Shown here: positions 3,915 to 63,569 of the stretch, one piece after another
How the letters are laid out: the number at the start of each line of letters is the position of its first letter
Numbering within the stretch: the stretch's first letter is position 1
Assembly: GCA_002269645.1 (NCBI GenBank)
Contig: NIVC01000031.1
Span: forward strand, 1,116,001-1,180,000
Direction of reading: 5' to 3'
DNA length: 64,000 nucleotides
From: Macrostomum lignano
Lineage: Eukaryota
Translations under genes and position numbers: made by a program
Notes under the pieces: generated by a model
Seen by the model: the letters and a program-made list of their open reading frames with translations, nothing else
Databases searched by the model: none
What the model was told of the DNA's origin: nothing

Positions 3915-3946
<32 letters not shown>

Positions 3947-3997
3947 GCCACAAAAGTCTCAGTCGCGACTGCTTCTGCAGCAAAAGCAGCAACAGCA

Positions 3998-4031
<34 letters not shown>

Positions 4032-5599: not shown

Positions 5600-5649
<50 letters not shown>

Positions 5650-5743
5650 GCTACTACTATTACTACTACTACTACTACTACTACTGATACTACTACTACT
5701 ACTACTACTACTGGTACTACTACTACTACTACTACTACTACTG

Positions 5744-5809
<66 letters not shown>

Positions 5810-29960: not shown

Positions 29961-30371
29961 TACATTTATGAGTATTGGCATCTCAGCAATTCCCCCGTGA
30001 GCCTTAAAATCTCAGCAACTCCACACCCGTGAGCCTTTTGTATCTCAGAAATCGAATCAGCATGCTGCTGTGCTTTCGTTTATCCTGGGACCATCCCACT
30101 GAGTTTTCCTAATGCCAAGAACAACTAAAGCTATGTAATGTACACGACGCGACACCCACGTTTCATGGAAAAAAGTTTTGAAGGGCACCTAAAATAAATA
30201 ATTTGCTGGATTTAACGCTTTGCAATTAACATTAATTTATACTGTTTTCAGATCCTACATGGCTAATCGAACTTTTCGAAGAGTTAGAAATGAAGTTTAA
30301 GGCCCGTAACTAATTTTAGATAGGCAGATAGCAAGGCAACCTTGTTAAAATATGGGGGTTGGCCTTCAGAA

Positions 30372-32010
30372 ACGTATGAAACATTCGCCGACACTTATTC
30401 AGACACTTCTACAGACACTTTATTTTCTGTCGTACGGTTAGGAACAAGCATTAAATTTGTCTAGGACACTTCCTAATTCATATTTAATGAAATAAAGCAG
30501 TCCATGCATAGTTTTAATTTTGCAATTTTGTTTTTGTGCACTCGTTCCAGACTTTCAAATTATGGCTTTTATCGCGTAGTGTGCGTGCATGCATCGTGTA
30601 CAACGATTAGCTGCAGCGTGCTAAATAGTTCAATTAGGTATTAAAAGCGTACAAGGTATTTGTACAATAGTATTTGTACATTTTAGTTGAAGTTAAAAGT
30701 TCAAGCTTTTAGTGAATCATTGGAAAATAAAACTATCCGTTTTAAATCGTGCAACATATTGTTTTGTCTCGGACATTTGTGACACTGTCACTTAGGGTTG
30801 CAAGGTTTTTTAAAAGAGAAACTGTTGCTTTTCCAATGCTGAAGTATTTGTGTTGTATGGATCAGGGTTTTTCGTCAAAATTTGGATGCATGTATACATC
30901 TAAACATATAAAAATGATCAAGGTTGAAGATTACCCTATGGTATAACTGTTTTCTCCATTTTACTATTTCAAAGTGCCCACGTGAAGTTAGATTTAGCAT
31001 GCCAGCCTTAAAAAATAAAAAAATCTACATAGTGTAGAATTGTATACTCTTTTATTTAAGACTATATTATATTCCCAATATATTTGCTTAGATAAATCGA
31101 AAAGTATTTACTTTACTTGAAAAAAATAATGTTCACTACAAATATTTCAATGTAGAAACCAGGAAACATAAACCTATTAAGTCTTATATAGAAATGAAGG
31201 ATAAAGATATGGATAGAATATAATAAAGCCATTGTGGGCATTAAATATAAAACAAAAGAATCACTTAAGGCAAAATTTGAAAAAAGTGAATTTTTGGCAT
31301 GCTCCAAGAAAAGAGGCTTATAATTTGAAATATTTTTGCTTTTGTTTGACAAAAAATATGTATAGATTTATACTTTTGGGCAAGGTTTATTTTCTCTTAA
31401 AATTCTAATTGTAAATTTGCCAGTAAGCTTAAAAATTGTTGTAAGTTGAAGCTCAAATAAAATTAGTCTTAACTCCAATCTGACTTTCCAAAGTAAATCC
31501 CTAAATTATTTGTTACAATTGCTTTAAAAACTTGCCATTTCATTTATTCATTAATCAAAATTTTGTTCTAGAAACTGATACCTATAGAAGGTTTTTAGTT
31601 TTTAAGAAATCTAGTAACTAGTGTCAGAGAAATATGTTTATGTAGGTTTTATATATATATATCAACCTTATATATAAAAAAGGTTGCACACTGAGATTTA
31701 AATACAGCTTCTAACATGTGTGTCCAGAGGTGAGATTGTGGCCAACTGCACACCAATAGCATACCAACTCTATACCAAATCCATACTGACATGCCAACTG
31801 TATACCAACTGTATACAAACACCATATCAACTCCATACCAACTGCATACCAACCCCATACCAATATGCCAACTGCATACCAACTCCATACCAATATGCCA
31901 ACTGCATACCAACTCCATACCAACATGCCAACTGCATACCAACTACATACCAACATGCCAACTGCATACCAACACCATACCAACTCCATACCAACTGCAT
32001 ACCAACTGCA
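30372..32010 (+). repeat. Left long TIR (AT-rich unique part plus start of satellite)
   Basis: Reverse complement of ~41475-43115. The only indel noticed is one TA unit in a (TA)n run. Confidence 0.92.
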
Positions 32011-34378
32011 TACCAACACCATACCAACTACATACCAACATGCCAACTGCATACCAACACCATACCAACTCCATACCAACTGCATACCAACTGCATACCA
32101 ACTCTATACCAACTACATACCAACATGCCAACTGCATACCAACACCATACCAACTCCATACCAACTGCATACCAACTCCATACCAACTATACTCCAACAT
32201 GCCAACTGTATACCTACACCATACCAACTGTATGCCAACTGCATACCAACTCCATACCAACATGCCAACTGCATACCAACTCCATACCAACTGCATACCA
32301 ACTCCATACCAACATGCCAACTGCATACCAACTCCATACCAACTGCATACCAACTACATACCAACATGCCAACTGCATACCAACACCATACCAACTCCAT
32401 ACCAACTACATACCAACATGCCAACTGCATACCAACACCATACCAACTGCATACCAACTCCATACCAACATGCCAACTGCATACCAACTACATACCAACA
32501 TGCCAACTGCATACCAACACCATACCAACTCCATACCAACTGCATACCAACTGCATACCAACTCCATACCAACTACATACCAACATGCCAACTGCATACC
32601 AACACCATACCAACTCCATACCAACTGCATACCAACTCCATACCAACTATACTCCAACATGCCAACTGTATACCTACACCATACCAACTGTATGCCAACT
32701 GCATACCAACTCCATACCAACATGCCAACTGCATACCAACTCCATACCAACATGCCAACTGCATACCAACTCCATACCAACATGCCAACTGCATACCAAC
32801 TACATACCAACTGCATACCAACTACATACGAACATGCCAACTGCATACCAACACCATACCAACTCCATACCAACTACATACCAACATGCCAACTGCATAC
32901 CAACACCATACCAACTGCATACCAACTCCATACCAACATGCCAACTGCATACCAACTACATACCAACATGCCAACTGCATACCAACACCATACCAACTCC
33001 ATACCAACTGCATACCAACTCCATACCAACTATACTCCAACATGCCAACTGTATACCTACACCATACCAACTGTATGCCAACTGCATACCAACTCCATAC
33101 CAACATGCCAACTGCATACCAACTCCATACCAACTGCATACCAACTCCATACCAACATGCCAACTGCATACCAACTCCATACCAACTGCATACCAACTAC
33201 ATACCAACATGCCAACTGCATACCAACACCATACCAACTCCATACCAACTACATACCAACATGCCAACTGCATACCAACACCATACCAACTGCATACCAA
33301 CTCCATACCAACATGCCAACTGCATACCAACTACATACCAACATGCCAACTGCATACCAACACCATACCAACTCCATACCAACTGCATACCAACTGCATA
33401 CCAACTCCATACCAACTACATACCAACATGCCAACTGCATACCAACACCATACCAACTCCATACCAACTGCATACCAACTCCATACCAACTATACTCCAA
33501 CATGCCAACTGTATACCTACACCATACCAACTGTATGCCAACTGCATACCAACTCCATACCAACATGCCAACTGCATACCAACTCCATACCAACATGCCA
33601 ACTGCATACCAACTCCATACCAACATGCCAACTGCATACCAACTACATACCAACTGCATACCAACTACATACCAACATGCCAACTGCATACCAACACCAT
33701 ACCAACTCCATACCAACTACATACCAACATGCCAACTGCATACCAACACCATACCAACTGCATACCAACTCCATACCAACATGCCAACTGCATACCAACT
33801 ACATACCAACATGCCAACTGCATACCAACACCATACCAACTCCATACCAACTGCATACCAACTCCATACCAACTACATACCAACATGCCAACTGCATACC
33901 AACACCATACCAACTCCATACCAACTGCATACCAACTCCATACCAACTATACTCCAACATGCCAACTGTATACCTACACCATACCAACTGTATGCCAACT
34001 GCATACCAACTCCATACCAACATGCCAACTGCATACCAACTACATACCAACATGCCAACTGCATACCAACACCATACCAACTCCATACCAACTGCATACC
34101 AACTGCATACCAACTCCATACCAACTACATACCAACATGCCAACTGCATACCAACACCATACCAACTCCATACCAACTGCATACCAACTGCATACCAACT
34201 CCATACCAACTATATTCCAACATGCCAACTGTATACCTACACCATACCAACTGTATGCCAACTGCATACCAACTCCATACCAACATGCCAACTGCATACC
34301 AACTCCATACCAACTCCATACCAACATGCCAACTGCATACCAACTCCATACCAACATACTAACTACATACCAACATGA
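31765..34378 (+). repeat. Satellite of 11/19-bp units (ATACCAACTGC/TCC/ACC/TAC; ATACCAACATGCCAACTGC), left arm
   Basis: Directly visible. An 843-bp higher-order duplication is evident from ORF-track periodicity (e.g. 32113 vs 32956, 32573 vs 33416). Confidence 0.97.
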
Positions 34379-34452
34379 CAACTTATATTATGCCACACTA
34401 AACGAAAACATGGCAAATTCATACCATTGTTTCATGTTTCAGGCTTCTTTGC

Positions 34453-37020
34453 ATGGCAGCGAAGAAAAGTGTGAACGACACTTCTGAAGCCATTAGCGGT
34501 GACCATTCAGGTGCTGCTGGTGCACAAGTTTTTTCTGCTGGAGGTTTTTTTGTGGAATCATGCATATCAACTAATCTCTTCGTGAATCACTTTGATACAA
34601 GAACTTGTAAACTTAAGCCTTCTTGGTTGGATCAAGTCATTTATCCACTGTTAAGACAGCATGGTGAGTATTGTCAGTTCTCAGTTAATAAGGTTAGACT
34701 GCGTGCATTTAAGCGCCATAGGAAGGACTGCAGTTTTCTTTGGATGCGCCTAGTCTGTGCCGAAGGCTCTGGTTGCAGTATGGCATTCGTCGTCACCTTA
34801 AACAAGGCGCCGACTGATGGGCAGTCCTCTACACTGACGCTACGAAGAATCTCAGAGCACTCGGGGCATGATGTTCCATCAAGTTGTTCCTCTTATCGCT
34901 ATCTGTTGCAACGAGGTTCACAAGAGTGCCGTAACTTTGTTTTATCTCAGGCCACCAACCCTGCTGCCAAGCCAACGCAGATCTATGTGAAAGCAATCGA
35001 GCTGTTTGGTAGCGAAGCATGCTCTCTATCTGCTGTCCGTACAACTGTTAGTCGGACAAAAGCTGCCGACGACAAGTCTCCAGACGACATAAGAGATTTA
35101 AGACTCCAAATGAAAGACTGGAAGTTGACTATAAACGAGGATGGAGTCATTAGCGGCTATATCCAAAAGATTGACGTTGCACCAGTTAGTGTGATTCTCC
35201 ATACCTCCATGCAGTTGGATTTGCTTCGCGACGTGCTGAAAGGCAATCAGCTTGCTCCTCTCCACTTAGACGCCACCGGCGGAATTGTGCGACAGACCCA
35301 GAACGTGCCGAGCACTGTACTTCTGTGCAGTGCTGTTGTTGCAACCCCGGATATAAAGAGAACAGCTGTATCAGAAAGCATCATGGAGGTCACGCGCTCG
35401 GAAAATGTGTCCAGTTGGCTAATGCATTTTTTAGCAGATTTCGCTCGTCACTGCAACATAGGACTGTGGGAACTACCCAAGAAAGGTCCGCAAATCTACG
35501 TGTCTGACTTTAGCTGGGTTTTCATTCATGGTATTCTCCGAGCCGCATGCACGACCTGTGTTACAGACTACCTGCGTGTACAGTACAATCGACTTCGGAG
35601 TGCTGATCTGAAGCCACCTGAATCTCCTGTTGTGTTTATCTGTAGCTCGCATTTGCTGCGCGCTGTTGCCAGGACTTTGAAGTCACCAGATAAAATCGAT
35701 AAGGTTACTTATCGCGAGTTCATGCTCTCTTTTGCACTATTAGTGACGTCGAAAACTTTGCGTTGCGCCCAAGCTGTTTGGAAGGCAATGGTCGAGGTGT
35801 TTACCTCCAGGCGGGTAAATCCTGCCACTTTGAAGGCTTTACAAATTCTACATGGTAGGTTCGACTTCAGTTCGTTGGAGATTCCTGATGAAAACCAAGT
35901 GGCTGAAGATTCTGCTAATGTCTCAAATGCAGTGCAAGAAGACGTCGCATTGGCTGAATTGGAGACTGGACTACGAGCCTCATCACCTATTGCGAAGTAC
36001 TTCAACGATTTGACAAGCGAAGTGACAGCAAGCGATGGCAATGGCGTGCTGAACAATCTTTTCTACCCTCAGGCTGTTCAGGTTGTATTGCGAAAGTGGA
36101 TGCCACTGTTTCCTCTTTGGAGTGTGGCAGTGTTTGGAGGAAATCGTAGCGCACACGTGACCAACGCCGCTGTTGAATCATGGTTCAGCTGGTGCAAAAG
36201 CGAAGCACTGCCTTCTCCAAGTTCTCGGCTCAGGTTACCAAGATTTGTCCGTGCGCAACTAACAACCGTAAAACTGCAACTGAAGCGGTTGCAGCACGAG
36301 CAACATCCAATTCGCCCCCCAAAGCGTGCTAGAGGACGCAAATGTGGCTTTGATGCTCCGTTAAACCCACCTGGAGATCCCTGGAAAAGGTCAGGAGCCT
36401 CAAAAAGACGAAGAACCAGCTTCATTCAATCGGCATTATCAATTCCGCCAGCCGTTGCACCCACGACCTGTACTCTAGCTGCGCCTGCTGCAAGTGGGTC
36501 TCGCTTGGGCAGCCAGCCCGTCATTGTCCAGGTTCGGCCTGCTATTGCTCGCACGACCTGTACTCTAGCTGCGCCTGCTGCAAGTGGGTCTCGCTCGGGC
36601 AGCCAGCCCGTCATTGTCCAGGTTCGGCCTGCTATTGCACCCACGACCTGTACTCTAGCTGCGCCTGCTGCAAGTGGGTCTCGCTCGGGCAGCCAGCCCG
36701 TCATTGTCCAGGTTCGGCCTGCTATTGCACCCACGACCTGTACTCTAGCTGCGCCTGCTGCAAGTGGGTCTCGCTTGGGCAGCCAGCCCGTCATTGTCCA
36801 GGTTCGGCCTGCTATTGCACCCACGACCTGTACTCTAGCTGCGCCTGCTGCAAGTGGGTCTCGCTTGGGCAGCCAGCCCGTCATTGTCCAGGTTCGGCCT
36901 GCTATTGCACCCACGACCTGTACACTAGCTGCGCCTGCTGCAAGTGGGTCTCGCTCGGGCATTTCACCTGCACCAACAGCACAGAATACCACCTGTCACA
37001 GCCTACCAGATGAGCAAATT
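34453..37020 (+). CDS. MULE/NOF-FB-like DDE transposase (exon 1)
   Basis: N-terminal C-x5-C...H-x2-H (CAEGSGC...EHSGH), LHLDATG (D1), VSDFSW (D2), CSSH (MULE CxxH), TNAAVESWF (E), and a C-terminal 30-aa repeat. Donor ATT|GTGAGT at 37021; the raw ORF reads on to 37149. Confidence 0.88.
36455..36960 (+). repeat. 90-bp coding tandem repeat (~5.6 copies)
   Basis: Encodes APTTCTLAAPAASGSR(L/S)GSQPVIVQVRPAI repeats in the transposase frame. Confidence 0.95.
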
Positions 37021-37554
37021 GTGAGTGATGAAATTGCATTTTTTCAGTTTAGAAATACCTTCAGTCAACCCTTGTATTGGTTTACGTATTGTGTATGCGC
37101 CGTACACTCACTCCGCCACAATTTGCGTCTCCCACTAGATCTGTCGTAGTAATGTATGTGCCATGTCTCAGCAACTTGTGGGTAAGGTGCAACCTTATCA
37201 ATCAACTCTCTTTGTAGGCCTCCTCCGTCTCGACTGGCACAGGTATTTATATTGCACAATCCAACATGTTCCGTATGATGCACGTCTGTTACGTGATTGT
37301 TCTCTGATTAGAGATCTAAAGTTTATGATTCTATCATTTTTTTGCTTTTCGTGTCACCGATTATGCCCTTTTAAGTTTTACTAATTTCCATGAATTAGCA
37401 TTCAACATGTTGCTTTCCATAAGTATTTGTACTTTTAAGTTTCGTTTCTTTTGCTTACGTCGAGGCGCCATTTTTTGTTGTTAAATGGATGTGACTGGGC
37501 TGTTCACTGGGACATTTTGATGGTAAATTCGTTCCTAACCGCCAATTTTATTAG

Positions 37555-38634
37555 GACGCGCCGACACTGCAGTGTCATTTCCTGCACTATCGCCACGGTC
37601 GCCAGAGGGGCTACCGAATCCGATGGGCACGTATTGTGCTTTCAATGCCGCCAGTCAATGCTTGGTTGCAACATTAACGAGCGCACTATCGTGTGATGCA
37701 GATTCACCACTTGCATTGTTCCTTAACTGCCTAATGACAGGCAAAGACGTTCTGTTGCTGCATTCAGCCGCGTTTCAGTGGTGCAGTAAAGCATTTCATA
37801 TGGATCCTATGGCACAAAACTGTGCCTTAGAGTTTCTGACCGGAATGCTGTTTCTTTCTGAGCTCAAACTGCGATTCAGCTGCGAGGTAAGGGTGAACGG
37901 TTTATTAAGTTTATGACTATTTAAATGCGTTTTAGTAAAGTGATTTAAGCCTGCATCCTGAATCTAAATTTATTTGTAAGTTACCTTCGAAGACAGTATA
38001 TACTTTGCTGGAAGGCAAAGAATACCTTTCAATCGCGCTTCCACTGTGTGTTGGTCTTCACAGTTGCACCATGAGTACTGTTCCTATCCATCTTTTTTAT
38101 TTCGTAGATTTCTACAACTTTGAGTTGTTCCGCCTGTTTCAAAGTGACACGACTGCTACCTAGAGACACGGCAACTATTCTACGTTTATCAATTCCTGAT
38201 CACGACGACTCGCTTGATTTCCCGGCACTCATTAGACAGTCACTGTTTTCTACTCAAGACCACACCGACATCCGTTGTCCGACTTGCGACGTCGGGGGTG
38301 CAGCTATGCACAAACACTTGCAACAACGTCGGAGCACATATGCATGGGAATTAGCCGAGTCTCTGTCAAGCGCAGAAAGGGACAAACTGTACTATTCGAG
38401 AAGAACACTAAAGTTGTACCCATCGAGATGAAGCTTACTTTGAGTGGCAGAAGCTACAAGCTTCGTGCAGCCATCGTTCACATTGGTAGTCGCGTGAATA
38501 GTGGTCACTATATTGCATACGTATTCTGTGGCCGCACTAGCTACTGTGTCAGTGATTTGACTGTACGAAAATTATCTTTGTCAGCGGCATTCAATGACGT
38601 GAAGCGAAACTGCTGCGCTCTTTTTTACGGCTAA
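37555..38634 (+). CDS. Ubiquitin-specific protease (peptidase C19/USP) domain carried by the transposon
   Basis: Exon 37555-37886: Cys box GLPNPMGTYCAFNAASQCL and QNCALEFL (QxDAxEF-like). Exon 38108-38634: CSAC and CPTC zinc pairs and His box YKLRAAIVHIGSRVNSGHYIAYV...SD. One frame change at the G5 run 38294-38298. Confidence 0.85.
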
Positions 38635-39476
38635 CGTGCTGGTGATCTCCGTGTTATTAACATAATGTGGACGGTTTACTTATTTTCTTGAGTTTATTCG
38701 TGTTTGTAATGGTCTCATGCCGTTGAAAGTATAAATTCATAACTGATGATCGTGCTGTGTAATGTATTTATAACAAAAACTTTTAACTGTGTTGAAAAGG
38801 TCTACATATATACATGTACGGATTTGCATTTTATAGTTTACCGCCATTTTAATTCTCTATTTTTCTGTATGCGCTAAAAGCTGGGACTAAACGCCGTTAG
38901 TAAACCGTTTAGACAACGTGAGTTCTAAAACTTATAGTGTCAACTATATACTCTTTTCTTGCAGCTAAATACTCTCCATTTGAGTATAATCGTAATTGTT
39001 TTTGGCCTGTGAAACCTGTACACCTGTCACTTATCACTTAGGCCAATAAATGTCACAAAAGAAAAAATTGTTCAACGAAATACGTGCCATGAAACATTCC
39101 TTTGCTTTATTTATCCGAAAGAATTTATTTCAACACAAGGACTGACAACTAATACGGGTAAAGGAAATGAAACTGTTCAAATATAAGTATAAACTACAAT
39201 TAATCGTTCAAGGAAGTATAGATTAAAAACCACATAAGATACTTGTCTCATAGTTACTACTACGCTGAAGTCATTCAACTACATACTTTGTTGCAATGAA
39301 AATTGTTGCATGGTACAATAGATAAGCCAATAAGCTATACGAACGGTATGACTTTGTTTAATGCTCGAATACTAGCGTTCTTATTTTCGTGCAAAAGAAG
39401 CTGGCAAACTCGCATAACGAACTCGCAAACTGAACAGACACGCATCCGATATTCCGTCACGCATCATCCTAGTCTG

Positions 39477-40616
39477 TTACTCATGCCTCGTTCGCGAGCG
39501 CAATGACATCGCTGGTTGGACCGACCTTAAAGATCTCTGGGGCCTCTGCGATCTCCGACGCATTGGTTTTAGTGGTCCAAGAGCGGGACACTCGTACTGT
39601 TGGGACTGCCGCTGTTCATCCAGCTCGAGCTGCCGCTGCTCCTCTGGCAGTGCGAGTTGCCGTTGGCCGTCCTGTATCTGCGGATGCCGCTGTTCATCCA
39701 GCTCGAGCTGCCGCGGCTCCTCCTGCAATGCGAGTTGCCGTTGGCCGTCCTGTATCTGCGGATGCCGCTGTTCATCCAGCTCGAGCTGCCGCGGCTCCTC
39801 CTGCAGTGCGAGTTGCCGTTGGCCGTCCTGTATCTGCGGATGCCGCTGTTCATCCAGCTCGAGCTGCCGCGGCTCCTCCTGCAGTGCGAGTTGCCGTTGG
39901 CCGTCCTGTATCTGCGGATGCCGCTGTTCATCCAGCTCGAGCTGCCGCGGCTCCTGCAGTGCGAGTTGCCGTTGGCCGTCCTGTATCTGCGGATGCCGCT
40001 GTTCATCCAGCTCGAGATGCCGCTGCTCGTCTTGCAGCGCGTGCTGCCGCTGCTCCTCATCAGTTGGGCGTGATCGCCGCTGCATGAAACGCCGACGGTG
40101 CACAGTCGATTGTAGCTGACTGAAGCCGCGCGAGACAACGAGCAGAGAACGAAGAACAGACACATCACATGAAGAAATAAGGAGCCGAAAGCTCTGCAAA
40201 ACTTGCTTCCGCAGTCGCTTTGAACTTTGAAAATGGTGACCCGGAACCTCTCGACGTAGGACAACTGACTGCGTCAGATGTGGCTTAGTTACACGCTGCA
40301 GCCAAGCAATGCCATTACCACGGTGGTCTTTGTTTCCACAACCATATACACCGTGCAAAAATGCAACCTTGCTAGGATCGGTTATTAATTGGACAACAGA
40401 CACTCGATCACGTCCGCACCTACGAAATCCGTCTCGCACACGGATATTAGAATGATTAAATGAACGTGTGCAAACGCAAAGCCTCTGGCAAACCGACTGA
40501 ATCGATAGTTCATCGCTGTTGTTGAACGTCACAATGACAGGAAGAGAAGGGCATGGTAGGACCGCACCTACACAAGGCAGAACAGCATCCGGTGGGCCTT
40601 GTAATAACTGGTCCAT
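39477..40616 (-). CDS. Orphan ORF2 of the transposon (convergent), with a 26-aa Gln/Glu-rich repeat
   Basis: 379-aa ATG-started ORF lying between the USP region and the right satellite. The repeat QLELDEQRHPQIQDGQRQLALQEEPR has a 78-bp period. No family recognised. Confidence 0.5.
   Translation of the reverse strand: MDQLLQGPPDAVLPCVGAVLPCPSLPVIVTFNNSDELSIQSVCQRLCVCTRSFNHSNIRVRDGFRRCGRDRVSVVQLITDPSKVAFLHGVYGCGNKDHRGNGIAWLQRVTKPHLTQSVVLRREVPGHHFQSSKRLRKQVLQSFRLLISSCDVSVLRSLLVVSRGFSQLQSTVHRRRFMQRRSRPTDEEQRQHALQDEQRHLELDEQRHPQIQDGQRQLALQEPRQLELDEQRHPQIQDGQRQLALQEEPRQLELDEQRHPQIQDGQRQLALQEEPRQLELDEQRHPQIQDGQRQLALQEEPRQLELDEQRHPQIQDGQRQLALPEEQRQLELDEQRQSQQYECPALGPLKPMRRRSQRPQRSLRSVQPAMSLRSRTRHE
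39605..40030. repeat. 78-bp tandem repeat (~5.5 copies)
   Basis: gccgctgttcatccagctcgagctgccgc recurs every 78 bp; one unit is 3 bp shorter. Confidence 0.93.
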
Positions 40617-40744
40617 GAATATGGAAGAGTGCGATTTTAGTCATCAAAAGAGTCAGGAAAGATGGCAACATGGCAGAAGTATCCCAAGAGTTGTACAAAA
40701 AGAGAACCTAAAAGTTCCTACGAGTCTCGCAATTTAACATTCTT

Positions 40745-41720
40745 GGTATGGAGTTGGCATGCAGTTGGCATGTTGGTATGGAGTTGGTATGCAGTTGGTA
40801 TGCAGTTGGTATGCAGTTGGCATACAGTTGGTATGGAGTTGGTATGCAGTTGGTATGCAGTTGGTATGCAGTTGGCATACAGTTGGTATGGTGTTGGTAT
40901 ACAGTTGGCATGTTGGAATATAGTTGGTATGGAGTTGGTATGCAGTTGGTATGCAGTTGGTATGCAGTTGGTATGGAGTTGGTATGCAGTTGGCATGTTG
41001 GTATGGAGTTGGTATGCAGTTGGTATGCAGTTGGTATGGTGTTGGTATGCAGTTGGCATGTTGGTATGGAGTTGGTATGGAGTTGGTATGCAGTTGGTAT
41101 GGAGTTGGTATGCAGTTGGCATGTTGGTATGGAGTTGGTATGCAGTTGGCATGCAGTTGGTATGGTGTTGGTATGCAGTTGGCATGTTGGTATGTAGTTG
41201 GTATGCAGTTGGTATGGAGTTGGTATGGTGTTGGTATGCAGTTGGCATGTTGGTATGTAGTTGGTATGCAGTTGGCATGTTGGTATGGAGTTGGTATGCA
41301 GTTGGCATGTTGGTATGGAGTTGGTATGCAGTTGGCATACAGTTGGTATGGTGTAGGTATACAGTTGGCATGTTGGAGTATAGTTGGTATGGAGTTGGTA
41401 TGCAGTTGGTATGGAGTTGGTATGGTGTTGGTATGCAGTTGGCATGTTGGTATGTAGTTGGTATGGAGTTGGTATGCAGTTGGTATGCAGTTGGTATGGA
41501 GTTGGTATGGTGTTGGTATGCAGTTGGCATGTTGGTATGTAGTTGGTATGCAGTTGGCATGTTGGTATGGAGTTGGTATGCAGTTGGCATATTGGTATGG
41601 AGTTGGTATGCAGTTGGCATATTGGTATGGGGTTGGTATGCAGTTGGTATGGAGTTGATATGGTGTTTGTATACAGTTGGTATACAGTTGGCATGTCAGT
41701 ATGGATTTGGTATAGAGTTG
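40745..41720 (-). repeat. Satellite block of right arm (inverse of 31765-34378)
   Basis: (GTTGGTATGCA/GGA/GGT; GTTGGCAT)n, about 1 kb. Confidence 0.97.
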
Positions 41721-43115
41721 GTATGCTATTGGTGTGCAGTTGGCCACAATCTCACCTCTGGACACACATGTTAGAAGCTGTATTTAAATCTCAGTGTGCA
41801 ACCTTTTTTATATATAAGGTTGATATATATATATATAAAACCTACATAAACATATTTCTCTGACACTAGTTACTAGATTTCTTAAAAACTAAAAACCTTC
41901 TATAGGTATCAGTTTCTAGAACAAAATTTTGATTAATGAATAAATGAAATGGCAAGTTTTTAAAGCAATTGTAACAAATAATTTAGGGATTTACTTTGGA
42001 AAGTCAGATTGGAGTTAAGACTAATTTTATTTGAGCTTCAACTTACAACAATTTTTAAGCTTACTGGCAAATTTACAATTAGAATTTTAAGAGAAAATAA
42101 ACCTTGCCCAAAAGTATAAATCTATACATATTTTTTGTCAAACAAAAGCAAAAATATTTCAAATTATAAGCCTCTTTTCTTGGAGCATGCCAAAAATTCA
42201 CTTTTTTCAAATTTTGCCTTAAGTGATTCTTTTGTTTTATATTTAATGCCCACAATGGCTTTATTATATTCTATCCATATCTTTATCCTTCATTTCTATA
42301 TAAGACTTAATAGGTTTATGTTTCCTGGTTTCTACATTGAAATATTTGTAGTGAACATTATTTTTTTCAAGTAAAGTAAATACTTTTCGATTTATCTAAG
42401 CAAATATATTGGGAATATAATATAGTCTTAAATAAAAGAGTATACAATTCTACACTATGTAGATTTTTTTATTTTTTAAGGCTGGCATGCTAAATCTAAC
42501 TTCACGTGGGCACTTTGAAATAGTAAAATGGAGAAAACAGTTATACCATAGGGTAATCTTCAACCTTGATCATTTTTATATGTTTAGATGTATACATGCA
42601 TCCAAATTTTGACGAAAAACCCTGATCCATACAACACAAATACTTCAGCATTGGAAAAGCAACAGTTTCTCTTTTAAAAAACCTTGCAACCCTAAGTGAC
42701 AGTGTCACAAATGTCCGAGACAAAACAATATGTTGCACGATTTAAAACGGATAGTTTTATTTTCCAATGATTCACTAAAAGCTTGAACTTTTAACTTCAA
42801 CTAAAATGTACAAATACTATTGTACAAATACCTTGTACGCTTTTAATACCTAATTGAACTATTTAGCACGCTGCAGCTAATCGTTGTACACGATGCATGC
42901 ACGCACACTACGCGATAAAAGCCATAATTTGAAAGTCTGGAACGAGTGCACAAAAACAAAATTGCAAAATTAAAACTATGCATGGACTGCTTTATTTCAT
43001 TAAATATGAATTAGGAAGTGTCCTAGACAAATTTAATGCTTGTTCCTAACCGTACGACAGAAAATAAAGTGTCTGTAGAAGTGTCTGAATAAGTGTCGGC
43101 GAATGTTTCATACGT
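41475..43115 (-). repeat. Right long TIR
   Basis: Reverse complement of 30372-~32010. Confidence 0.92.
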
Positions 43116-46100
43116 CTTCAGAAAAGTGAAATAAAAAATTATTTAGGCTTAAAAATTTGAATTAAAACTAAAAAGTATGTTAAAGCCGGAATGCTCTTTT
43201 ATCATAAAGGGGAATAAATGTCGAAGTTCTCAGCGAAAAACGACATTTCTATGTGTATTCATTCAAAAGTGAAATTGTTGGAAAAGTGGCCTTCAAAACA
43301 TTTTCCATAGATTTGGAGTGTTGCGTCCTACTACTTTAGTATAGTCTTGCCTAACGCTTGTAAATGTACCCAAGAAACCGAAATTGATCCCACAGCATTT
43401 ACAATTATTGAATTTTAGTAGACCAAGTTGTTTGTGTAAGGATGTTTACTTATCTTCGCAAATGTTTTAATAATAATCTTTCCGTGCGAATTTGAATCGC
43501 AAAAAAGTCGAACAATGCTAGCTCAGAGGGGTTGAGAGATATCAGGCGGCAGACGGCACACAGTTGAGACGTTGTTAAGTAAGCCTAGACAGCTAGTCAC
43601 TATGAGATTTACGAAATATAAAACTAATACATACAAAATATACAGTTTTTTAATCTAAATTGAATTTTCTAACCTTTAAACTTGAGTTTAACATATTTTT
43701 ATGCAGCATAGGGCCCTAAAGTTAGATCCTACAGCAACCATCCATTACTTGACTCCATTCTCCAATGATAGGCCTTATTTTGAAAGTAGGCCTCCGCATG
43801 GACATGGCGTATTTTTAGCAATGTTTTATTCCATTTAATAAATCTTACTTTCCTGAGTTCAGTTAATAGAATGCAAAACTCTTTCTGTAGTGTAGGCCTG
43901 TCCCCCTATCTAATTTTCAACTTATTTTTCAATCTTTCTTTCAATTTCAATCAATTCCAATCTTATTTAAGTACTTGTTATTCAATATTGTGTGACTTCC
44001 TTATCATTTTAACATCTTGCTAACTTCCCATTCATTCTCCATCAAATTTTGAATTTTGCAAGTCTTTTTTACCTTAATCTTCAGGGTCCTTCAGTCATTC
44101 TAAGCAAAGCTGGCAGCTAGGGAAATATTTCAAATTAACTCCTTTAACTACTAAAGTACTAAAGAGTAATAAAGTACTCAATACTATTTACTAATTTAGT
44201 ATTCTGTAGGCCTAGTTTATTCAAAAAATATATTAAAAATTATCAATACAGATGGATCCATGTGAATAAAATTAGAATTATTGGCATAGGACTGTGGGGA
44301 TAAACATTTCATTTAATTATGTTTTTGAATTTAAGGAATTTTGAACAAAGTTTTAACAAAGTTAAACAATAGTTAGCAAGTTTGTTGTCACATTTGGTCA
44401 TTGCATTAGACATTATAGTAGTGTACCACCTAGAAAAATGTGCCAAAAGTGTTACCTAGGTAACAAAAGTACTATAGAAACTCATCTAAGTGTATCCAAT
44501 AGGGCATTAGATGTGCCATACATGGCTATGAACTGGGCTTATGTTAATAAGTACTGCAGGGCATCTAGCCATGATCTAGAAGAGTTGTTCAAGATTAGAG
44601 CTCTTAAAAATCAAGATTTAGACCAAGACAAGATTTGAGACAAGAAAAGTCTAAAGTCAAAAAAATTTAAGACAAGATAAGATAAGATTAAAAAATATTA
44701 AAGGTATTACAAATTTTGATAAATAAAATATATCTGTCAAATAGTTTTCATTTAGAATGAAAGAAAGAAATGACAAGTGAGAAGCTATAGCTTTTTTTGG
44801 TTTTTGTCTACAATCGTTCCAAGTATATTTCTCAATTGCAAAGTTTAATTTATGCATTAAATTAGTCACTTATTATAACAAATATGCCATAGGATTAGTA
44901 GATCCTTTAGTAAGTAGAAACAGTAAGTATACAAAAAAGTAATTTTCTCATTTTTCCTAACTCTCAAAGCCAAAGGTTTTTGCTTTCAAGGCTGCTTTGA
45001 TCAGACCTTAAATTAACAAACATTCCTTAGAAATCACTATTGAAAAGGCAAAACAATAAATATTAAATTAAACAAACTCAATTGAAAAAAAGACAGCTAT
45101 TACGTTTTGACTAATATCTTTATATTAAATAAATTAATAAAACTATATACAACTGTTTTTCCTTCATTAATTTTTGCCAAATTTGCCTAGATTGTGCTGA
45201 ACTTGCTTTCACCAAATTTGCCAAAAATTCATCAAATATGTCTATTATGAATCTTTGTCATAGAATTAGTTTGTTACCAAATTAGTCAGCACCTAAGAAG
45301 ATTGGTTAAGAATTAAAAATTTTTTTTTAATTACCAAGTTGCATTTTAAAATGACTTTTAGTTTTATGTTAGGCCAATTTAAAACTTTCCTTTTTGATAA
45401 ATTTCAAAATTCAAAAGCTTTTATTTTTGTATCACAGTTTTCACTAAGTCTTTCAATGAAAAAGACTAGGCCTAAATGGTTTATTATTCCAATAAAGAAA
45501 GGGTAGATAAATATTTTTAAAAGTTTTGCTTTACAAAACATATACTTTTTTTAGACAGTTATTTCCTTTTTTTTGATATAATTGCATCGCAACTGCAAAG
45601 TTATTTATTTGCAAATTTTCCATGATAAGATATATATTTATTTTTAGATATTTTGCAAGTTTTAATGATTTCAATTATTTAGCCTTTAGACTTTGACTTA
45701 GCTGCAAGGCAAAATTATTTGGCCTAGATATGTTATAAATGTAGAAACAAAATTGTGAAATTAATCAAGTAATCAAGAAAGTTATATTTTTGTGATATAA
45801 AGAGACATTTTTATTTATTTTTAATGCATATAAAATATAGCACTTTTTAAAAAAAATTCAAGTAAAAGTGCTATAACTTTAATATTTGTCTATTGAAGTC
45901 AATGTTCTTAGTATTATTATATATTTAAAATAATTATAGGATGGTATTGAATGTTTACTTAACCTAGTTTTTGGCTTTCATATACCTATTATCAATATCT
46001 CCAAGTGTCTCCTCAGCTATCATCAATGCCTATCCTTGGTCAGTTGCACTCTAGTTAGTATAAGCTTCTTATTTCCTAATAGGCCACAATTAATCTATTT

Positions 46101-48056: not shown

Positions 48057-51000
48057 ATGGCATCTCAGCATCACGCAGCTGATGATGTTTGCAATCCTTA
48101 TAAAGAGTTGCAAAACTTGAAACCGGACCCAGATATGCAACGCATTCATCTGGTCTCAATGTCTGAGCAGACTCTGCAGCTGCTCAGAGCTGAGTCTAAA
48201 GCCGAATTCAGTCACATGAAGGACACTAAAAATGTTGTTATTATAATATTTGGCGCTTCCGGTGATTTGGCTAAGAAGAAAATCTACCCGACATTGTGGT
48301 GGCTATTCAAAGATAAGCTTTTGCCGCCAAACACTTTCTTTATTGGCTATTCTAGGTCGAGTCTGACTGTGCAAATGGTCAGGGACAATGCTAAGCCATA
48401 TCTGCGCACCGTTGATGGCGAACAAGAACGATTGGATGCTTTCTTTGCTAGGAATTCCTATGTGCAGGTGAAGGATTAATTCAGACTTGTTTGATTTAGA
48501 AAACAGTTGAGTGAGATTCGAAGGCAGTAAGGAATGGTAGGGTAGAGTAGAAGACAGTAGGAGAGGGTAGAAGACAGTAGGGGAGGGTAGAAAACGGTAG
48601 GGGAGGGTAGAAGACAGTAGGGGAGGGTAGAAGACAGTAGAAGACAGTAGAGGAGGGCAGAAGACAGTAGAGTGGGGGTAGAAGACAGTAGTAGAGTGAG
48701 GGTAGAAGACAGTAGAAGACAGTAGAGGAGGGCAGAAGACAGTAGAGGAGGGCAGAAGACAGTAGAGGAGGGCAGAAGACAGTAGTAGAGTGAGGGTAGA
48801 AGACAGTAGAGGAGGGCAGAAGACAGTAGAGTGGGGGTAGAAGACAGTAGTAGAGTGAGGGTAGAAGACAGTAGAAGACAGTAGAGGAGGGCAGAAGACA
48901 GTAGAGGAGGGTAGAAGACAGTAGTAGAGTGAGGGTAGAAGACAGTAGAAGACAGTAGTAGAGTGAGGGTAGAAGACAGTAGAAGACAGTAGAGGAGGGC
49001 AGAAGACAGTAGAGTGGGGGTAGAAGACAGTAGTAGAGTGAGGGTAGAAGACAGTAGAAGACAGTAGAGGAGGGCAGAAGACAGTAGAGGAGGGTAGAAG
49101 ACAGTAGTAGAGTGAGGGTAGAAGACAGTAGGGGAGGGTAGAAGACAGTAGAATGGGGGTAGAATACAGTAGGGGAGGGTAGAAGACAGTAGGGGAGGGT
49201 AGAAGACAGTAGTAGAGTGAGGGTAGAAGACAGTAGAGGAGGGCAGAAGACAGTTAGAGTAAGGGTAGAAGACAGTAGGGGAGGGTAGAAGACAGTAGAA
49301 TGGGGGTAGAATACAGTAGGGGAGGGTAGAAGACAGTAGGGGAGGGTAGAAGACAGTAGTAGAGTGAGGGTAGAAGACAGTAGAAGACAGTAGAGGAGGG
49401 CAGAAGACAGTAGAATGGGGGTAGAATACAGTAGGGGAGGGTAGAAGACAGTAGGGGAGGGTAGAAGACAGTAGTAGAGTGAGGGTAGAAGACAGTAGAA
49501 GACAGTAGAGGAGGGCAGAAGACAGTTAGAGTGAGGGTAGAAGACAGTAGGGGAGGGTAGAAGACAGAAGAATGGGGGTAGAATACAGTAGAATGGGGGT
49601 AGAATACAGTAGGGGAGGGTAGAAGACAGTAGGGGAGGGTAGAATACAGTAGTGGAGGGTAGAATACAGTAGTAGAGTGAGGGTAGAAGACAGTAGTAGA
49701 GTGAGGGTAGAAGACAGTAGAGGAGGGCAGAAGACAGTTAGAGTGAGGGTAAAAGACAGTAGGGGAGGGTAGAAGACAGTAGAATGGGGGTAGAATACAG
49801 TAGGGGAGGGTAGAAGACGGGGGGTGGGGGGTAGAAGTCATTCAGATCAGATCAGAGATTGAAACCAGAGAGATAATATATTTGAGTTTATAACATTATT
49901 TTCTTTTCAATAAGCTTTACCAGTGAAGCTAGTTTTTGAATAAGCAGCTCTCTGTGTGCCCTATTTAATCCAGGGCTCTTACGACAAGCGAGAAGACTTC
50001 GCCAAACTGGAGCAGTACATTCGCAGCAGTACAGAGTACGCCAGTTGCAATCGAGTGTACTACCTGGCCATACCGCCTTCCTTGTTCATGCACGTGGCAA
50101 CTCATTTGAAATCCGAGTGCTTCAGTCCTGATCAACAGGGCTGGTCAAGGGTGATCATTGAGAAACCATTTGGTAGAGATTTGCACACTAGCGAGATCCT
50201 GTCCCAGCACCTATCGAATCTGTTCACTGAGGATCAGGTGTACCGCATTGATCACTATCTGGGCAAGGAGATGGTCCAGAATGTGGTGGTGCTGCGGTTT
50301 GCTAATCGGATTTTGGCGCCATTGTGGAATAGGGATAATATTGCTAACGTGTTGGTCACGTTTAAGGTAAGTCTTTTAGTGTGAACTTTAGCCATTAGTT
50401 AGGTTTCTATGAAGTTTAGCACTTAGGACACATTAAACTTAAGTAGACAATAGGAAAAATTCAAAAGGACACCTTACCAAAAGCCAATAGGACATCTTAA
50501 ACTTTAGCCAAAAGTACACCTTAAACTTTAGTCTAAAGTACATCTAGAACTTTATCAGTACACCTTACACTTTAGTCAAAAAAGACATCTTGAACTTTAG
50601 CCAATAAAAGTACATCTTAAACTTACCAGTCAAAAGGACACCTTGTGACTAGTCAATAGGACACATTAAACTTGACAGCCAATAGGACACATGGAACTTA
50701 TCAGTCAATAAGACTCATGGAACAATTATTAGTCAATAGGACACATTCAATTATCAGCCAATAAGACACCTTGAACTTTAGCAGCCAATAGGACACCTTG
50801 AACTTTAGTAGCCAAAAAATAATACACATTGGACTTCATTGTTAACCTAAACTACCTTATCGGTCGCTTGAAATATCGATTAAAATCTAATAAATGTTGC
50901 AGGAAAACTTTGGCACGGAAGGCCGTGGCGGTTATTTCGACGAATTCGGCATTATTCGAGACGTGATGCAGAATCACCTGTTGCAGGTGCTTAGCTTAAT

Positions 51001-53421: not shown

Positions 53422-53579
53422 TGAAAAAGAAGCCTTCCGTTTCTAAATGATTGACAGCTAATGCTAAATAATTTTGGCTAAAATCATTATTCTCTTTATT
53501 TTATTACTTCACAGTTAGGGTAAAAAAGGCCGTAAGTTTATAAACGCTTTGATTATTTTTTTTTTGAAAATTAAGATTA

Positions 53580-54045
53580 ATAAGTTGATAAACTAAAAGA
53601 TTAATGAGTTGATAAACTAGAATATTGATGAGTTGATAAACTAGATTGATGAATTGATAAACTAGAAGATTGATAGGTTAATAACTAAAAGATTGATGAG
53701 TTGGTAAACTAGAATATTGATGAGTTGGTTAACTAGAAGATTGATGAGTTGATAAACTAGAATATTGATGAGTTGATAAACTAGAATATTGATGAGTTGA
53801 TAAACTAGAATATTGATGAGTTGATAAACTAGAATATTGATGAGTTGATAAACTAGAATATTGATGAGTTGATAAACTAGAATATTGATGAGTTGATAAA
53901 CTAGAATATTGATGAGTTGATAAACTAGAATATTGATGAGTTGATAAACTAGAATATTGATGAGTTGATAAACTAGAATATTGATGAGTTGATAGACTAG
54001 AATATTGATGAGTTGATAAACTAGAAGATTGATAAGTTGATAGAC
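53580..54045. repeat. 24-bp minisatellite
   Basis: (GATGAGTTGATAAACTAGAATATT)n downstream of the G6PD stop. Confidence 0.95.
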
Positions 54046-63436: not shown

Positions 63437-63569
63437 GTGCGCGTTTACTAATTGTGGTGTTTTTTCTCAGTCTGGTTTTATTCTTTCAAACTTTTTTTAG
63501 TTGTTGTTGCCGAGGCCTTAGCGTCTGTTGCTATATGTTGAAGTTCTGTTGCTAAAGCGTCTGGTTGCG

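What the first reader, a model, noticed from the sequence alone, without database searches (positions are those of the whole stretch)
34453..38634. Foldback/Mutator transposase apparently spliced to a USP-family deubiquitinase
Seen: inside one TSD-bounded element, a MULE-type DDE transposase (DATG, SDFSW, CxxH, VESWF) is followed on the same strand by exons encoding a USP (C19) fold. These carry Cys box GLPNPMGTYCAFNAASQCL, a QxxAxEFL box, two CxxC zinc pairs, and His box GHYIAY with the downstream Asp (SD). A phase-consistent GT-AG chain exists (34453-37020, 37218-37242, 37555-37886, 38108-38634), giving a fusion of roughly 1150 aa if the single frameshift is corrected. Known: Mutator-superfamily elements often carry Ulp1/SENP (C48) or OTU cysteine proteases. 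To my knowledge a C19 USP cargo is much less described. Inference: the element may encode a transposase that removes ubiquitin from itself or from chromatin, to resist degradation or silencing.
Basis: partly seen in the sequence, partly recalled or inferred. Interest (0 to 1): 0.92.

Follow-up and report, generated by a model that had tools for sequence, protein, structure and literature searches.

The report
Rehavkus transposon carrying a USP deubiquitinase
A recently active 12.7-kb jumping gene in the flatworm Macrostomum lignano carries, just after its transposase gene, two exons for an apparently intact ubiquitin-removing protease; this pairing recurs in related transposons of other animals, but whether the two are made as one protein here is unproven.

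Summary
Window 30372-43115 is one foldback-like DNA transposon of Macrostomum lignano with an 8-bp target-site duplication. It has six near-identical copies at different sites.

Its 898-codon ORF is a Rehavkus-group (Mutator superfamily) transposase. It matches Repbase Rehavkus DDE domains, and its predicted fold matches the IS256-family ISCth4 transposase. Pfam gives no hit.

Two exons downstream on the same strand encode a compact USP (C19) domain:
- Pfam UCH scores above its cut-off.
- The predicted fold matches USPs.
- The catalytic Cys, His and Asp and both CxxC pairs are present.

The window's frameshift is a G5 run. Four of six copies have G6 and are intact.

The proposed splice chain is not supported as written. 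The RNA-seq-based NCBI model joins 37020 to 37555, which is out of frame. At least three in-frame routes exist, including a donor at 36943 inside the coding repeat.

Fusion is still plausible:
- The USP has no start codon of its own.
- It has been under purifying selection.
- Two relatives encode transposase plus USP in one uninterrupted ORF.

Among the relatives examined, Ulp1 (C48) domains turned up more often than USP domains, and one relative carries an OTU domain. I rate this a new variant of a known kind, of moderate interest.

The parts
30364..30371 (.). Left copy of the 8-bp target-site duplication CTTCAGAA
   Evidence: The other copies have different duplications of 8-9 bp: GTACACTGT, TTATTAAT, GCGACTTT, TTATTTTC.
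30372..31662 (.). Left terminal inverted repeat, unique part. 1291 nt, 100% complementary to 41825-43115. Begins ACGTATGAAACATTCGCC.
31742..34374 (.). Left subterminal minisatellite. 11-bp unit CCAACTCCATA, about 250 copies. Inverted relative to 40743-41743.
   Evidence: The long 'ORFs' here are repeat artefacts.
34453..37020 (+). Transposase coding exon; the ORF stays open to 37149. N-terminal WRKY-like zinc-finger region at aa ~76-134. DDE core with D273 (35269-35271), D352 (35506-35508), C397xxH400 (35641-35652) and E575 (36175-36177).
36455..36961 (+). In-frame coding minisatellite: 5.6 copies of 90 bp (30 aa, APTTCTLAAPAASGSR.GSQPVIVQVRPAI). Copy number differs among element copies. Each unit holds a candidate donor gcaa|gtgggt.
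36944..36945 (+). Last candidate alternative donor GT. The exon would end at 36943 in phase 1. Joined to 37555 it gives ...TLAAPAA-R-RADTAV..., in frame with the USP.
   Evidence: Sequence. The same junction is used in UniProt model A0A1I8HZW9 (P0003). Its use in RNA has not been shown.
37021..37554 (+). Intron of the RNA-seq-based NCBI model (donor GTGAGT, acceptor ttattag). This junction leaves the USP exon out of frame.
37555..37886 (+). USP exon A: Cys box with the catalytic Cys codon at 37635-37637, and the QNCALEFL box. In the consensus of the copies there is no in-frame ATG before the catalytic Cys.
   Evidence: Homologous exon with the same 3' boundary in L006.
38108..38634 (+). USP exon B: two CxxC zinc pairs, the His box (His codon 38506-38508), Asp codon 38554-38556, and the stop at 38632-38634.
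38294..38298 (+). G5 run causing the frameshift in this copy. It is G6, and the frame is intact, in L001, L010, L011 and L012. It is G5 in the window and in L002.
   Evidence: Relatives P0010 and P0158 read through in the G6 frame.
39477..40616 (-). Second gene of the element. 379-aa ORF with 5.7 copies of a 78-bp (26-aa) repeat at 39607-40049. Function unknown.
   Evidence: Annotated from RNA-seq in the NCBI record. No homologue found in related loci.
40743..41743 (.). Right subterminal minisatellite, the inverted 11-bp unit
41825..43115 (.). Right terminal inverted repeat
43116..43123 (.). Right copy of the target-site duplication CTTCAGAA

Best explanation
Window 30372-43115 is an autonomous, recently active, foldback-like DNA transposon of the Rehavkus group (Mutator superfamily) in Macrostomum lignano.

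Its main gene encodes a transposase with an N-terminal WRKY-like zinc finger, a DDE/RNase-H core with a CxxH motif, and a C-terminal 30-aa repeat array. The gene is followed by two exons for a compact, catalytically complete USP-type (C19) deubiquitinase. That module is inherited with the element and has been kept under purifying selection.

Most likely (inferred) the USP is translated as the C-terminal domain of a transposase isoform. The isoform would arise by alternative 5' splice-site choice. Donor 37020 gives a transposase-only product. A phase-1 donor, such as 36943 in the coding repeat, gives transposase-USP.

The USP would then remove ubiquitin or a ubiquitin-like modifier from the transposase itself, or from chromatin or repair proteins at the element. 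That could protect transposition from degradation or silencing. This role is inferred from the interchangeable Ulp1 (C48), OTU and USP modules in the same transposase clade.
For: Shown:
- Organism and locus: the window is 100% identical to NIVC01000031.1 of GCA_002269645.1, flanks included.
- Structure: perfect 1291-bp terminal inverted repeats, inverted 11-bp minisatellites, 8-bp target-site duplication.
- Copies: six copies at least 98.7% identical (five of them at least 99.5%), with different flanks and different 8-9-bp duplications. All contain the USP exons.
- Transposase family: 635 relatives at E <= 1e-3. Repbase Rehavkus DDE domains from PMC6446971 match the transposase at 34-51 bits and the family profile at 78-294 bits.
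- Transposase fold: AlphaFold model with pLDDT 82.6. Its top five PDB matches are the ISCth4 (IS256) transposase, and the N-terminal region matches a WRKY domain.
- USP: Pfam above its cut-off, catalytic and zinc residues aligned, USP fold.
- Selection: versus the L006 homologue, pN = 0.35 and pS = 0.83, with the same intron position and phase.
- The G6 state is intact in 4 of 6 copies.
- RNA-seq-based annotation joins the transposase exon to USP exon A.
- No start codon: the consensus has no in-frame ATG before the catalytic Cys. In L006 the frame is open for at least 95 codons upstream with no Met.
- Relatives L004 (1320 aa: transposase-USP-Ulp1) and L013 (1507 aa: transposase-USP) are single uninterrupted ORFs.
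- Of 44 relatives scanned with Pfam, 12 have a PHD finger, 8 C48, 3 USP and 1 OTU.
Against: - The only RNA-derived model splices 37020 to 37555, which is out of frame. The transposase ORF then ends 40 codons into exon A.
- That stop lies upstream of the 37886/38108 junction, so a fully spliced form of this isoform might be degraded (inference).
- No protein joining exons A and B of this family appears among 1.84 billion representatives. Only P0003, which covers exon A alone, was found.
- Use of donor 36943 rests on one database gene model of unknown evidential basis.
- Two of six copies, including this window, carry the G5 frameshift. PacBio homopolymer error cannot be excluded.
- The three coding differences of this copy from the consensus of the copies are a frameshift and two non-synonymous changes.
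- The sister family in the same genome (P0008/P0156, 40% identical) has no USP within 10 kb downstream.
- No biochemical evidence exists for any function.
Confidence: 0.5

Rival explanations
1. The USP is made as a separate small protein from its own mRNA or cistron. For example, from a 19-nt first coding exon (ATG 37163-37181, donor G|GTAAGG) spliced to 37555, giving MSQQLVG-RADTAV... M. lignano commonly processes polycistronic precursors by SL trans-splicing.
For: - The 37163-37181 exon ends in phase 1 and has a strong donor.
- The annotated transposase isoform does not include the USP in frame.
Against: - No such gene is annotated in any of the six loci.
- The region is intronic in the RNA-based model.
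- In L006 the USP frame is open for at least 95 codons upstream of the Cys box without a Met. That argues for a larger N-terminal extension.
- Relatives have the USP inside the transposase ORF.
Confidence: 0.15
2. One reading: 34453-37020, micro-exon 37218-37242, 37555-37886, 38108-38634.
For: - It is phase-consistent, with an acceptable acceptor (ctctctttgtag|G) and a GT donor.
- Short-read aligners can miss 25-nt exons (general knowledge).
Against: - It is absent from the RNA-seq-based model of this locus.
- The donor GTATTT is weak.
- The micro-exon was chosen because it restores the frame, and at least two other routes do the same.
- Comparison of the copies neither supports nor contradicts it: the region is identical in all six.
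Confidence: 0.12
3. In this family the USP exons are no longer translated. They would be a recently stranded remnant of an ancestral transposase-USP fusion, now sitting in the 3' UTR or in retained introns and starting to decay.
For: - Out-of-frame junction in the RNA-based model.
- G5 frameshift in 2 of 6 copies.
- The window's private coding changes are non-synonymous.
- No spliced exon A+B product appears in the protein collections.
- A sister family lacks the USP altogether.
Against: - Four of six copies are intact across 285 codons, with every catalytic and zinc residue kept.
- Splice sites are intact and identical in all copies.
- Long-term purifying selection.
- The copies are too young (>= 98.7% identical) for the few changes among them to indicate decay.
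Confidence: 0.18
4. The USP is a Pack-MULE-style captured fragment of a host USP gene with no role for the element.
For: Mutator-like elements are known to capture host gene fragments (PMC6446971).
Against: - No close host USP was found. The nearest non-element USP is 36% identical, 60.7 bits, and comes from an ENA contig of unidentified organism.
- The same USP type, ending ...CALFYG, occurs in at least three divergent lineages at 45-53% identity with the same exon structure and pN/pS < 1.
- It is a complete domain, not a fragment.
Confidence: 0.05

Closest known systems
Rehavkus elements (Repbase group within or beside the Mutator/MuDR superfamily; e.g. Rehavkus-1_TC, Rehavkus-3_TC, Rehavkus-1_HR)
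   Same: - The transposase core is homologous: 34-51 bits pairwise, and 78-294 bits to the family profile.
- It shares the signature motifs LxxDATGS, DFSxA, CxxH and PLW...TNxxVExxF.
- Large size, long terminal inverted repeats, a minisatellite next to the terminus, and 8-9-bp duplications (PMC6446971).
   Different: - No PHD finger is detectable in this transposase, although 12 of 44 relatives have one.
- Minisatellites lie at both ends, giving a foldback architecture.
- It carries a USP module and a second, minus-strand gene.
- Published summaries list one ORF and no protease.
- Platyhelminthes is not among the listed hosts, which are arthropods and annelids.
Ulp1/C48-carrying Mutator-like elements (plant KI-MULE/Kaonashi type) and Ulp1-carrying Ginger2 elements
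   Same: A DDE transposon that carries a papain-fold protease for ubiquitin-like modifiers. In the present clade C48 turned up more often than USP (8 of 44 relatives scanned). One relative has both USP and C48 in a single ORF.
   Different: Here the protease is a C19 USP, a different fold family with a zinc ribbon. It is predicted to act on ubiquitin rather than SUMO. The statements about the plant elements and Ginger2 rest on my own knowledge and the title and term counts of PMC2836005. I did not test them here.
Helitron/Helentron-encoded deubiquitinases (OTU and VTD domains)
   Same: DUB domains are built into the transposition protein. Some transposon VTD domains were shown to be active enzymes. 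The proposed role is protection of transposition proteins from proteasomal degradation, and DUB classes substitute for one another (PMC9741609).
   Different: Rolling-circle RepHel elements rather than DDE cut-and-paste elements. OTU/VTD rather than USP.
Drosophila Foldback (FB/NOF) elements
   Same: Long terminal inverted repeats built largely of short tandem repeats that flank a coding core.
   Different: Homology to the NOF protein could not be tested because no reference sequence was available. The resemblance is architectural only.
Cellular USPs with solved structures (USP30, USP18, USP46, USP12, USP14, USP35)
   Same: Same fold (TM about 0.6, E about 1e-15). Cys box, QxDxxEF-type box, zinc ribbon, His box and Asp are all present.
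   Different: - Only about 285 residues and 15-22% identity.
- One-residue insertion before the catalytic Cys (GLPNPxGTYC).
- QQD is replaced by QNC.
- It is encoded inside a transposon and has no start codon of its own.

Membership tests
Mutator superfamily / Rehavkus group | Transposase core homologous to reference Rehavkus transposases | tested here: met
   phmmer against the window transposase: Rehavkus-3_TC 51.1 bits, Rehavkus-1_TC 46.5 bits, Rehavkus-1_HR 34.5 bits. The family profile A3 matches all six reference domains at 78-294 bits (sequences from PMC6446971 supplement).
Mutator superfamily / Rehavkus group | DDE triad with a C/DxxH motif after the second Asp | tested here: met
   D273, D352 and E575 are invariant or at least 90% conserved, and C397/H400 are invariant, in 47 sequences.
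Mutator superfamily / Rehavkus group | Catalytic fold closest to IS256/Mutator-type transposases rather than hAT, P, piggyBac or Transib | tested here: met
   The top five Foldseek PDB hits are the ISCth4 transposase (E 1e-4 to 4e-3, probability 0.97-1.0). The only other transposases listed are mariner-type catalytic domains and IstA, at E > 0.1. TM scores are low (0.2-0.36).
Mutator superfamily / Rehavkus group | Target-site duplication of 8-11 bp (9 bp for Rehavkus) | tested here: met
   Four copies have 8 bp and one has 9 bp. This falls in the MULE range, though mostly 8 rather than 9.
Mutator superfamily / Rehavkus group | Long terminal inverted repeats and a minisatellite near the terminus | tested here: met
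   1291-bp perfect inverted repeats plus 11-bp minisatellites at both ends.
Mutator superfamily / Rehavkus group | PHD finger in the transposase | tested here: not met
   No PHD hit in the 898-aa ORF at E <= 1. It is present in 12 of 44 relatives.
Mutator superfamily / Rehavkus group | Match to the Pfam MULE / Transposase_mut models | tested here: not met
   No Pfam hit to the transposase, or to P0002, at E <= 10. None among the 44 relatives at E <= 1e-3.
USP / peptidase C19 (Pfam PF00443) | Profile match above the curated cut-off | tested here: met
   36.9 bits against 23.9 for the spliced, frame-corrected product. Exon B of the window alone scores 29.3 bits. The Pfam alignment covers profile positions 72-241, so it does not cover the Cys box.
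USP / peptidase C19 (Pfam PF00443) | Catalytic Cys in a G-x-x-N-x-G-N-T-C-type box | tested here: met
   GLPNPxGTYCAFNxxxQxL aligns Cys-to-Cys with GxxNxGNTCYMN of P0153, P0100, P0113 and P0151. It is conserved in L006.
USP / peptidase C19 (Pfam PF00443) | His box and downstream Asp/Asn | tested here: met
   YKLRAAIVHIGSRVNSGHYIAYV aligns with USP12 and with the USP set. The Asp in CVSD aligns with the D of the other USPs.
USP / peptidase C19 (Pfam PF00443) | Four-Cys zinc ribbon in the fingers subdomain | tested here: met
   C117, C120, C167 and C170 are invariant in 8 sequences.
USP / peptidase C19 (Pfam PF00443) | USP fold | tested here: met
   AlphaFold model with pLDDT 74 and pTM 0.79. 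The top 50 PDB matches are all USPs. Caveat: the alignment used for the model contained USPs.
USP / peptidase C19 (Pfam PF00443) | Isopeptidase activity on ubiquitin | not testable with these tools
   Needs an enzyme assay.
Transposase-protease fusion protein (single polypeptide) | Transposase and USP joined in one reading frame in the mature mRNA | tested here: inconclusive
   The RNA-based model is out of frame. In-frame routes exist. Relatives L004 and L013 are continuous ORFs.
Drosophila Foldback/NOF | Homology to the NOF-encoded protein | not tested
Only the foldback architecture is shared.

The most novel reading that the evidence does not exclude
Rehavkus-type transposases across animals (flatworm, psyllid, firefly, possibly a bivalve, and unidentified samples) have repeatedly recruited three unrelated classes of ubiquitin or ubiquitin-like proteases (C48 Ulp1, C19 USP, OTU). 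That would make removal of a ubiquitin-type mark an integral, selectable step of their transposition.

In M. lignano, the coding minisatellite may supply an array of phase-1 splice donors. These would switch output between a transposase-only isoform and a transposase-USP isoform.
Probability: 0.3. Interest if true: 0.7.

Novelty: new variant of a known kind. Interest (0 to 1): 0.5.

Why it matters
Transposons with Ulp1, OTU or VTD proteases are known, but why they carry them is not. This case offers a young, multi-copy element that probably still moves, in a flatworm where transgenesis is available. It pairs a Mutator-type transposase with a minimal USP.

The same transposase clade swaps USP, Ulp1 and OTU modules. 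That points to a shared requirement for removing ubiquitin-type marks from the transposase or from chromatin at the element. It also gives a tractable system to test this: a catalytic Cys mutant, excision assays and DUB probes.

The case also extends Rehavkus to Platyhelminthes. It shows that the published description of Rehavkus (one ORF, PHD finger) is incomplete.

Tried and rejected
- Pfam on the transposase ORF, its halves and P0002 at E up to 10: nothing usable. Classification therefore had to come from fold comparison and the Repbase reference domains.
- PDB sequence search with the USP at E <= 0.01: nothing. Only at E <= 10 did weak hits appear, all of them USPs.
- Word-indexed protein search: it found only 2 relatives of the transposase and 1 of the USP. 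It found nothing more with a 47-sequence profile. The exhaustive search was needed.
- PDB search with the A3 profile: it hit only the C48 and PHD tails of relatives, not a transposase.
- Similarity between the open frame upstream of the L006 Cys box and the M. lignano 30-aa repeat: not significant, E = 0.14 in a tiny database. I dropped it as evidence. Only the open frame without a Met is used.
- The sister family (P0008/P0156; L003, L005): no USP within 10 kb downstream. The long P0156 model (1088 aa) ends in an unrelated 39-aa exon, so it is not a second example of fusion.
- ORF2 (39477-40616): no Pfam hit and no homologue in related loci.
- NAGNAG or neighbouring alternative splice sites that would rescue the frame of the 37020/37555 junction: none by inspection.
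- SL trans-splicing onto 37555 with a leader-borne AUG: if the leader ends in AUG (my recollection of flatworm spliced leaders, not checked here), that AUG would read the wrong frame.
- The Mercenaria protein P0040 spans 34 kb and lacks the His box, so it is weak evidence for fusion.
- The Cyamophila protein P0113 has its USP 900 residues upstream of the transposase. It may be a merged gene model.

Full report
**Source and context**

The 666-aa core of the ORF at 34453-37149 is 100% identical to Macrostomum lignano protein BOX15_Mlig004567g1. Locus L009, from contig NIVC01000031.1 of assembly GCA_002269645.1, is 100% identical to the window across the element core. It also has the same flanks and the same target-site duplication, so the window comes from that contig. 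The neighbourhood is ordinary flatworm DNA: a Dishevelled-like gene, a retrotransposon integrase remnant and several satellites.

**Check of the observation**

- The ORF at 34453-37149 (898 aa) carries LHLDATGG, VSDFSW, CSSH and VESWF.
- The exons 37555-37886 and 38108-38634 have canonical AG and GT borders. They encode the Cys box, QNCALEFL, CSAC and CPTC, SGHYIAY and CVSD.
- The chain with the 25-nt exon 37218-37242 is phase-consistent up to one frameshift.

The element is larger than the finding's span:
- Perfect 1291-bp inverted repeats at 30372-31662 and 41825-43115.
- Inverted arrays of an 11-bp minisatellite at 31742-34374 and 40743-41743. These arrays explain the spurious long ORFs there.
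- An 8-bp duplication, CTTCAGAA, flanking the ends.

**It is a mobile, young family**

Through the NCBI protein cluster I fetched five further copies: L001, L002, L010, L011 and L012.
- Over the 6.4-kb core they are 99.5-99.7% identical to the window, except L012 at 98.7-99.5%.
- Checked for L001 and L002, the flanks are unrelated to the window's and to each other.
- Where both ends were found, each copy has its own duplication: GTACACTGT, TTATTAAT, GCGACTTT, TTATTTTC.

**The transposase**

Pfam gives no hit at all. An exhaustive phmmer search of 1.84 billion representatives found 635 relatives at E <= 1e-3, nearly all aligned to residues ~190-650.

In a 47-sequence alignment the following are invariant or at least 90% conserved:
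- D273 (DATG)
- D352 (DFSW)
- C397/H400
- N571, E575 and K582

An AlphaFold model built on that alignment is confident (pLDDT 82.6, pTM 0.71).
- Its five best PDB matches are the IS256-family ISCth4 transposase, the prokaryotic relative of Mutator.
- No hAT, P, piggyBac or Transib/RAG structure appears in the list. The only other transposases listed (mariner-type catalytic domains, IstA) are at E > 0.1.
- The N-terminal beta-sheet region matches a WRKY DNA-binding domain. By established knowledge this is typical of Mutator-like transposases.

Six Repbase Rehavkus DDE domains, taken from the supplement of PMC6446971, settle the group.
- Three of them match the window protein directly, at 51, 46.5 and 34.5 bits.
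- All six match the family profile, at 78-294 bits.
- Twelve of 44 relatives carry the PHD finger that is the Rehavkus hallmark. This element does not.

Homology to Drosophila NOF was not testable.

**The USP**

With the frameshift corrected, exons A+B give 285 residues.
- Pfam PF00443 scores 36.9 bits against a cut-off of 23.9.
- At a permissive threshold all 18 PDB sequence hits are USPs, with the His box aligned to USP12.
- In an alignment with USP domains from relatives and a free-standing USP, the catalytic Cys, the Q..A.EFL box, four zinc cysteines, the His box and the Asp all line up.
- The AlphaFold model (pLDDT 74, pTM 0.79) matches only USPs in its top 50 PDB hits, at E about 4e-15 and TM about 0.6. 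Caveat: the alignment used for that model contained USPs.

**The frameshift**

It lies in a G run at 38294-38298. The run is G5 in the window and L002, and G6 in L001, L010, L011 and L012.

Divergent homologues read straight through in the G6 frame. These are P0010 from M. lignano and P0012/P0158 from an unidentified organism. The ancestral element therefore had an intact USP. The window copy is either mutated or mis-assembled at a homopolymer.

The window also has two private non-synonymous changes: T to M in PNPTGTYC, and V to L.

**Is the USP selected?**

Contig L006 (Logan run SRR31628425) holds both USP exons at 43-46% identity. The intron is at the same codon boundary and in the same phase. 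Nei-Gojobori counts give pN = 0.35 against a saturated pS = 0.83. The module has therefore been under purifying selection.

It is not a recent capture. The nearest USP not linked to a transposase is only 36% identical.

**Is it spliced to the transposase?**

This is the weak point of the finding.

The NCBI gene models for this family come from genome-guided RNA-seq assembly with StringTie/TACO and TransDecoder (PMC5730564).
- They join ...DEQI (37020) directly to 37555.
- That reads exon A in the wrong frame (DAPTLQCHF...) and stops after 40 codons.
- The transposase exon and USP exon A therefore appear on one transcript, but not in frame.

The 25-nt micro-exon that repairs the frame is absent from that model. 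I found two more phase-1 routes:
- A donor gcaa|gtgggt in every 90-bp repeat unit, the last with its exon ending at 36943. UniProt model A0A1I8HZW9 uses this donor and yields ...TLAAPAA-R-RADTAV....
- A possible stand-alone first exon, ATG 37163-37181, with a strong donor.

With several routes available, phase consistency alone is not evidence.

Points for a fusion:
- The consensus of the copies has no in-frame ATG upstream of the catalytic Cys. The only one in the window is a private T-to-M change.
- In L006 the frame stays open for at least 95 codons upstream of the Cys box without a Met. Chance for that is about 0.01.
- Two relatives encode a Rehavkus transposase followed by a USP in one uninterrupted ORF. 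L004 is 1320 aa and also has a C-terminal Ulp1 domain. L013 is 1507 aa.

Points against:
- The RNA-based junction is out of frame.
- No spliced exon A+B product appears in the protein collections.
- Two of six copies are frameshifted.
- A 40%-identical sister family in the same genome has no USP.

I put an in-frame transposase-USP isoform, by any route, at about 0.5 to 0.55.

**Wider pattern and likely function**

Among 44 relatives scanned with Pfam:

| Domain | Relatives |
|---|---|
| PHD | 12 |
| Ulp1/C48 | 8 |
| USP | 3 |
| YqaJ | 3 |
| OTU | 1 |

A further USP-bearing relative (P0151) and further C48-bearing relatives appeared in local scans and a second Pfam run. Named hosts of relatives include a sea cucumber, a firefly, a psyllid and a clam.

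Interchangeable proteases for ubiquitin-type modifiers on one transposase clade suggest that deconjugation itself is what the element needs. A parallel is the OTU and VTD deubiquitinases of Helitrons. For those, protection of transposition proteins from proteasomal degradation has been proposed, and some VTD domains were shown to be active (PMC9741609).

Whether the target here is the transposase, chromatin marks or repair factors is inference only.

**Novelty**

Full-text searches found no description of a DDE transposase with a USP domain. Published summaries of Rehavkus list one ORF, a PHD finger and a minisatellite, and no protease. Repbase Reports and Dfam could not be searched.

Since Ulp1-bearing Mutator-like elements and DUB-bearing Helitrons are known, this is a new variant of a known kind. 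It is of moderate interest and is not unique to this element.

Noticed in passing
window 39477-40616 (minus strand): A second gene inside the element: a 379-aa ORF with 5.7 copies of a 26-aa repeat. It is annotated from RNA-seq in the NCBI record. It has no Pfam hit and no homologue in related loci. Function unknown.
   Followed up: partly
window 36455-36961 and 39607-40049: Both element genes contain in-frame coding minisatellites (90 bp and 78 bp). Copy number differs between element copies. The NCBI gene models treat whole repeat units as 'introns', probably an artefact of mapping reads from copies with fewer repeats.
   Followed up: partly
relatives P0043 and P0129 (Pyrocoelia pectoralis KAK5642758.1): Some Rehavkus-type transposases also carry a YqaJ/viral alkaline-exonuclease domain together with PHD and Ulp1 domains. 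This suggests a larger accessory toolkit in this clade.
   Followed up: no
L003 and L005 (M. lignano contigs NIVC01001607.1, NIVC01000130.1): A second Rehavkus family in the same genome (P0008/P0156, 40% identical transposase). It also has C-terminal coding tandem repeats but no USP within 10 kb downstream.
   Followed up: partly
window 3660-4403 and 8138-9664 (+): Exons of a Dishevelled-like gene (Dishevelled-specific domain; PDZ plus DEP). A 115-bp tandem array (6774-7649) and a CTA microsatellite (5527-5818) lie between them.
   Followed up: no
window 19884-20984 (minus strand): Remnant of an LTR-retrotransposon integrase (Integrase_H2C2 plus rve).
   Followed up: no
window 15210-16736 and 22834-24399 (+): Two paralogous ORFs of 508 and 521 aa with similar N-termini and no Pfam hit. 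Possibly a tandemly duplicated single-exon gene.
   Followed up: no
window 55812-62245, with further arrays at 48546-49818, 51994-52804, 53576-54047, 54605-55234 and 63546-64000: A 6.4-kb satellite of a 61-bp unit (106 copies, 94% matches) and several smaller tandem arrays, most lying in regions of strong GC skew.
   Followed up: no
P0045 (MES9883988.1, labelled MAG: Sedimenticola sp.): A 1211-aa relative of this animal transposase is deposited under a bacterial metagenome-assembled genome. This is probably eukaryotic contamination of the bin.
   Followed up: no
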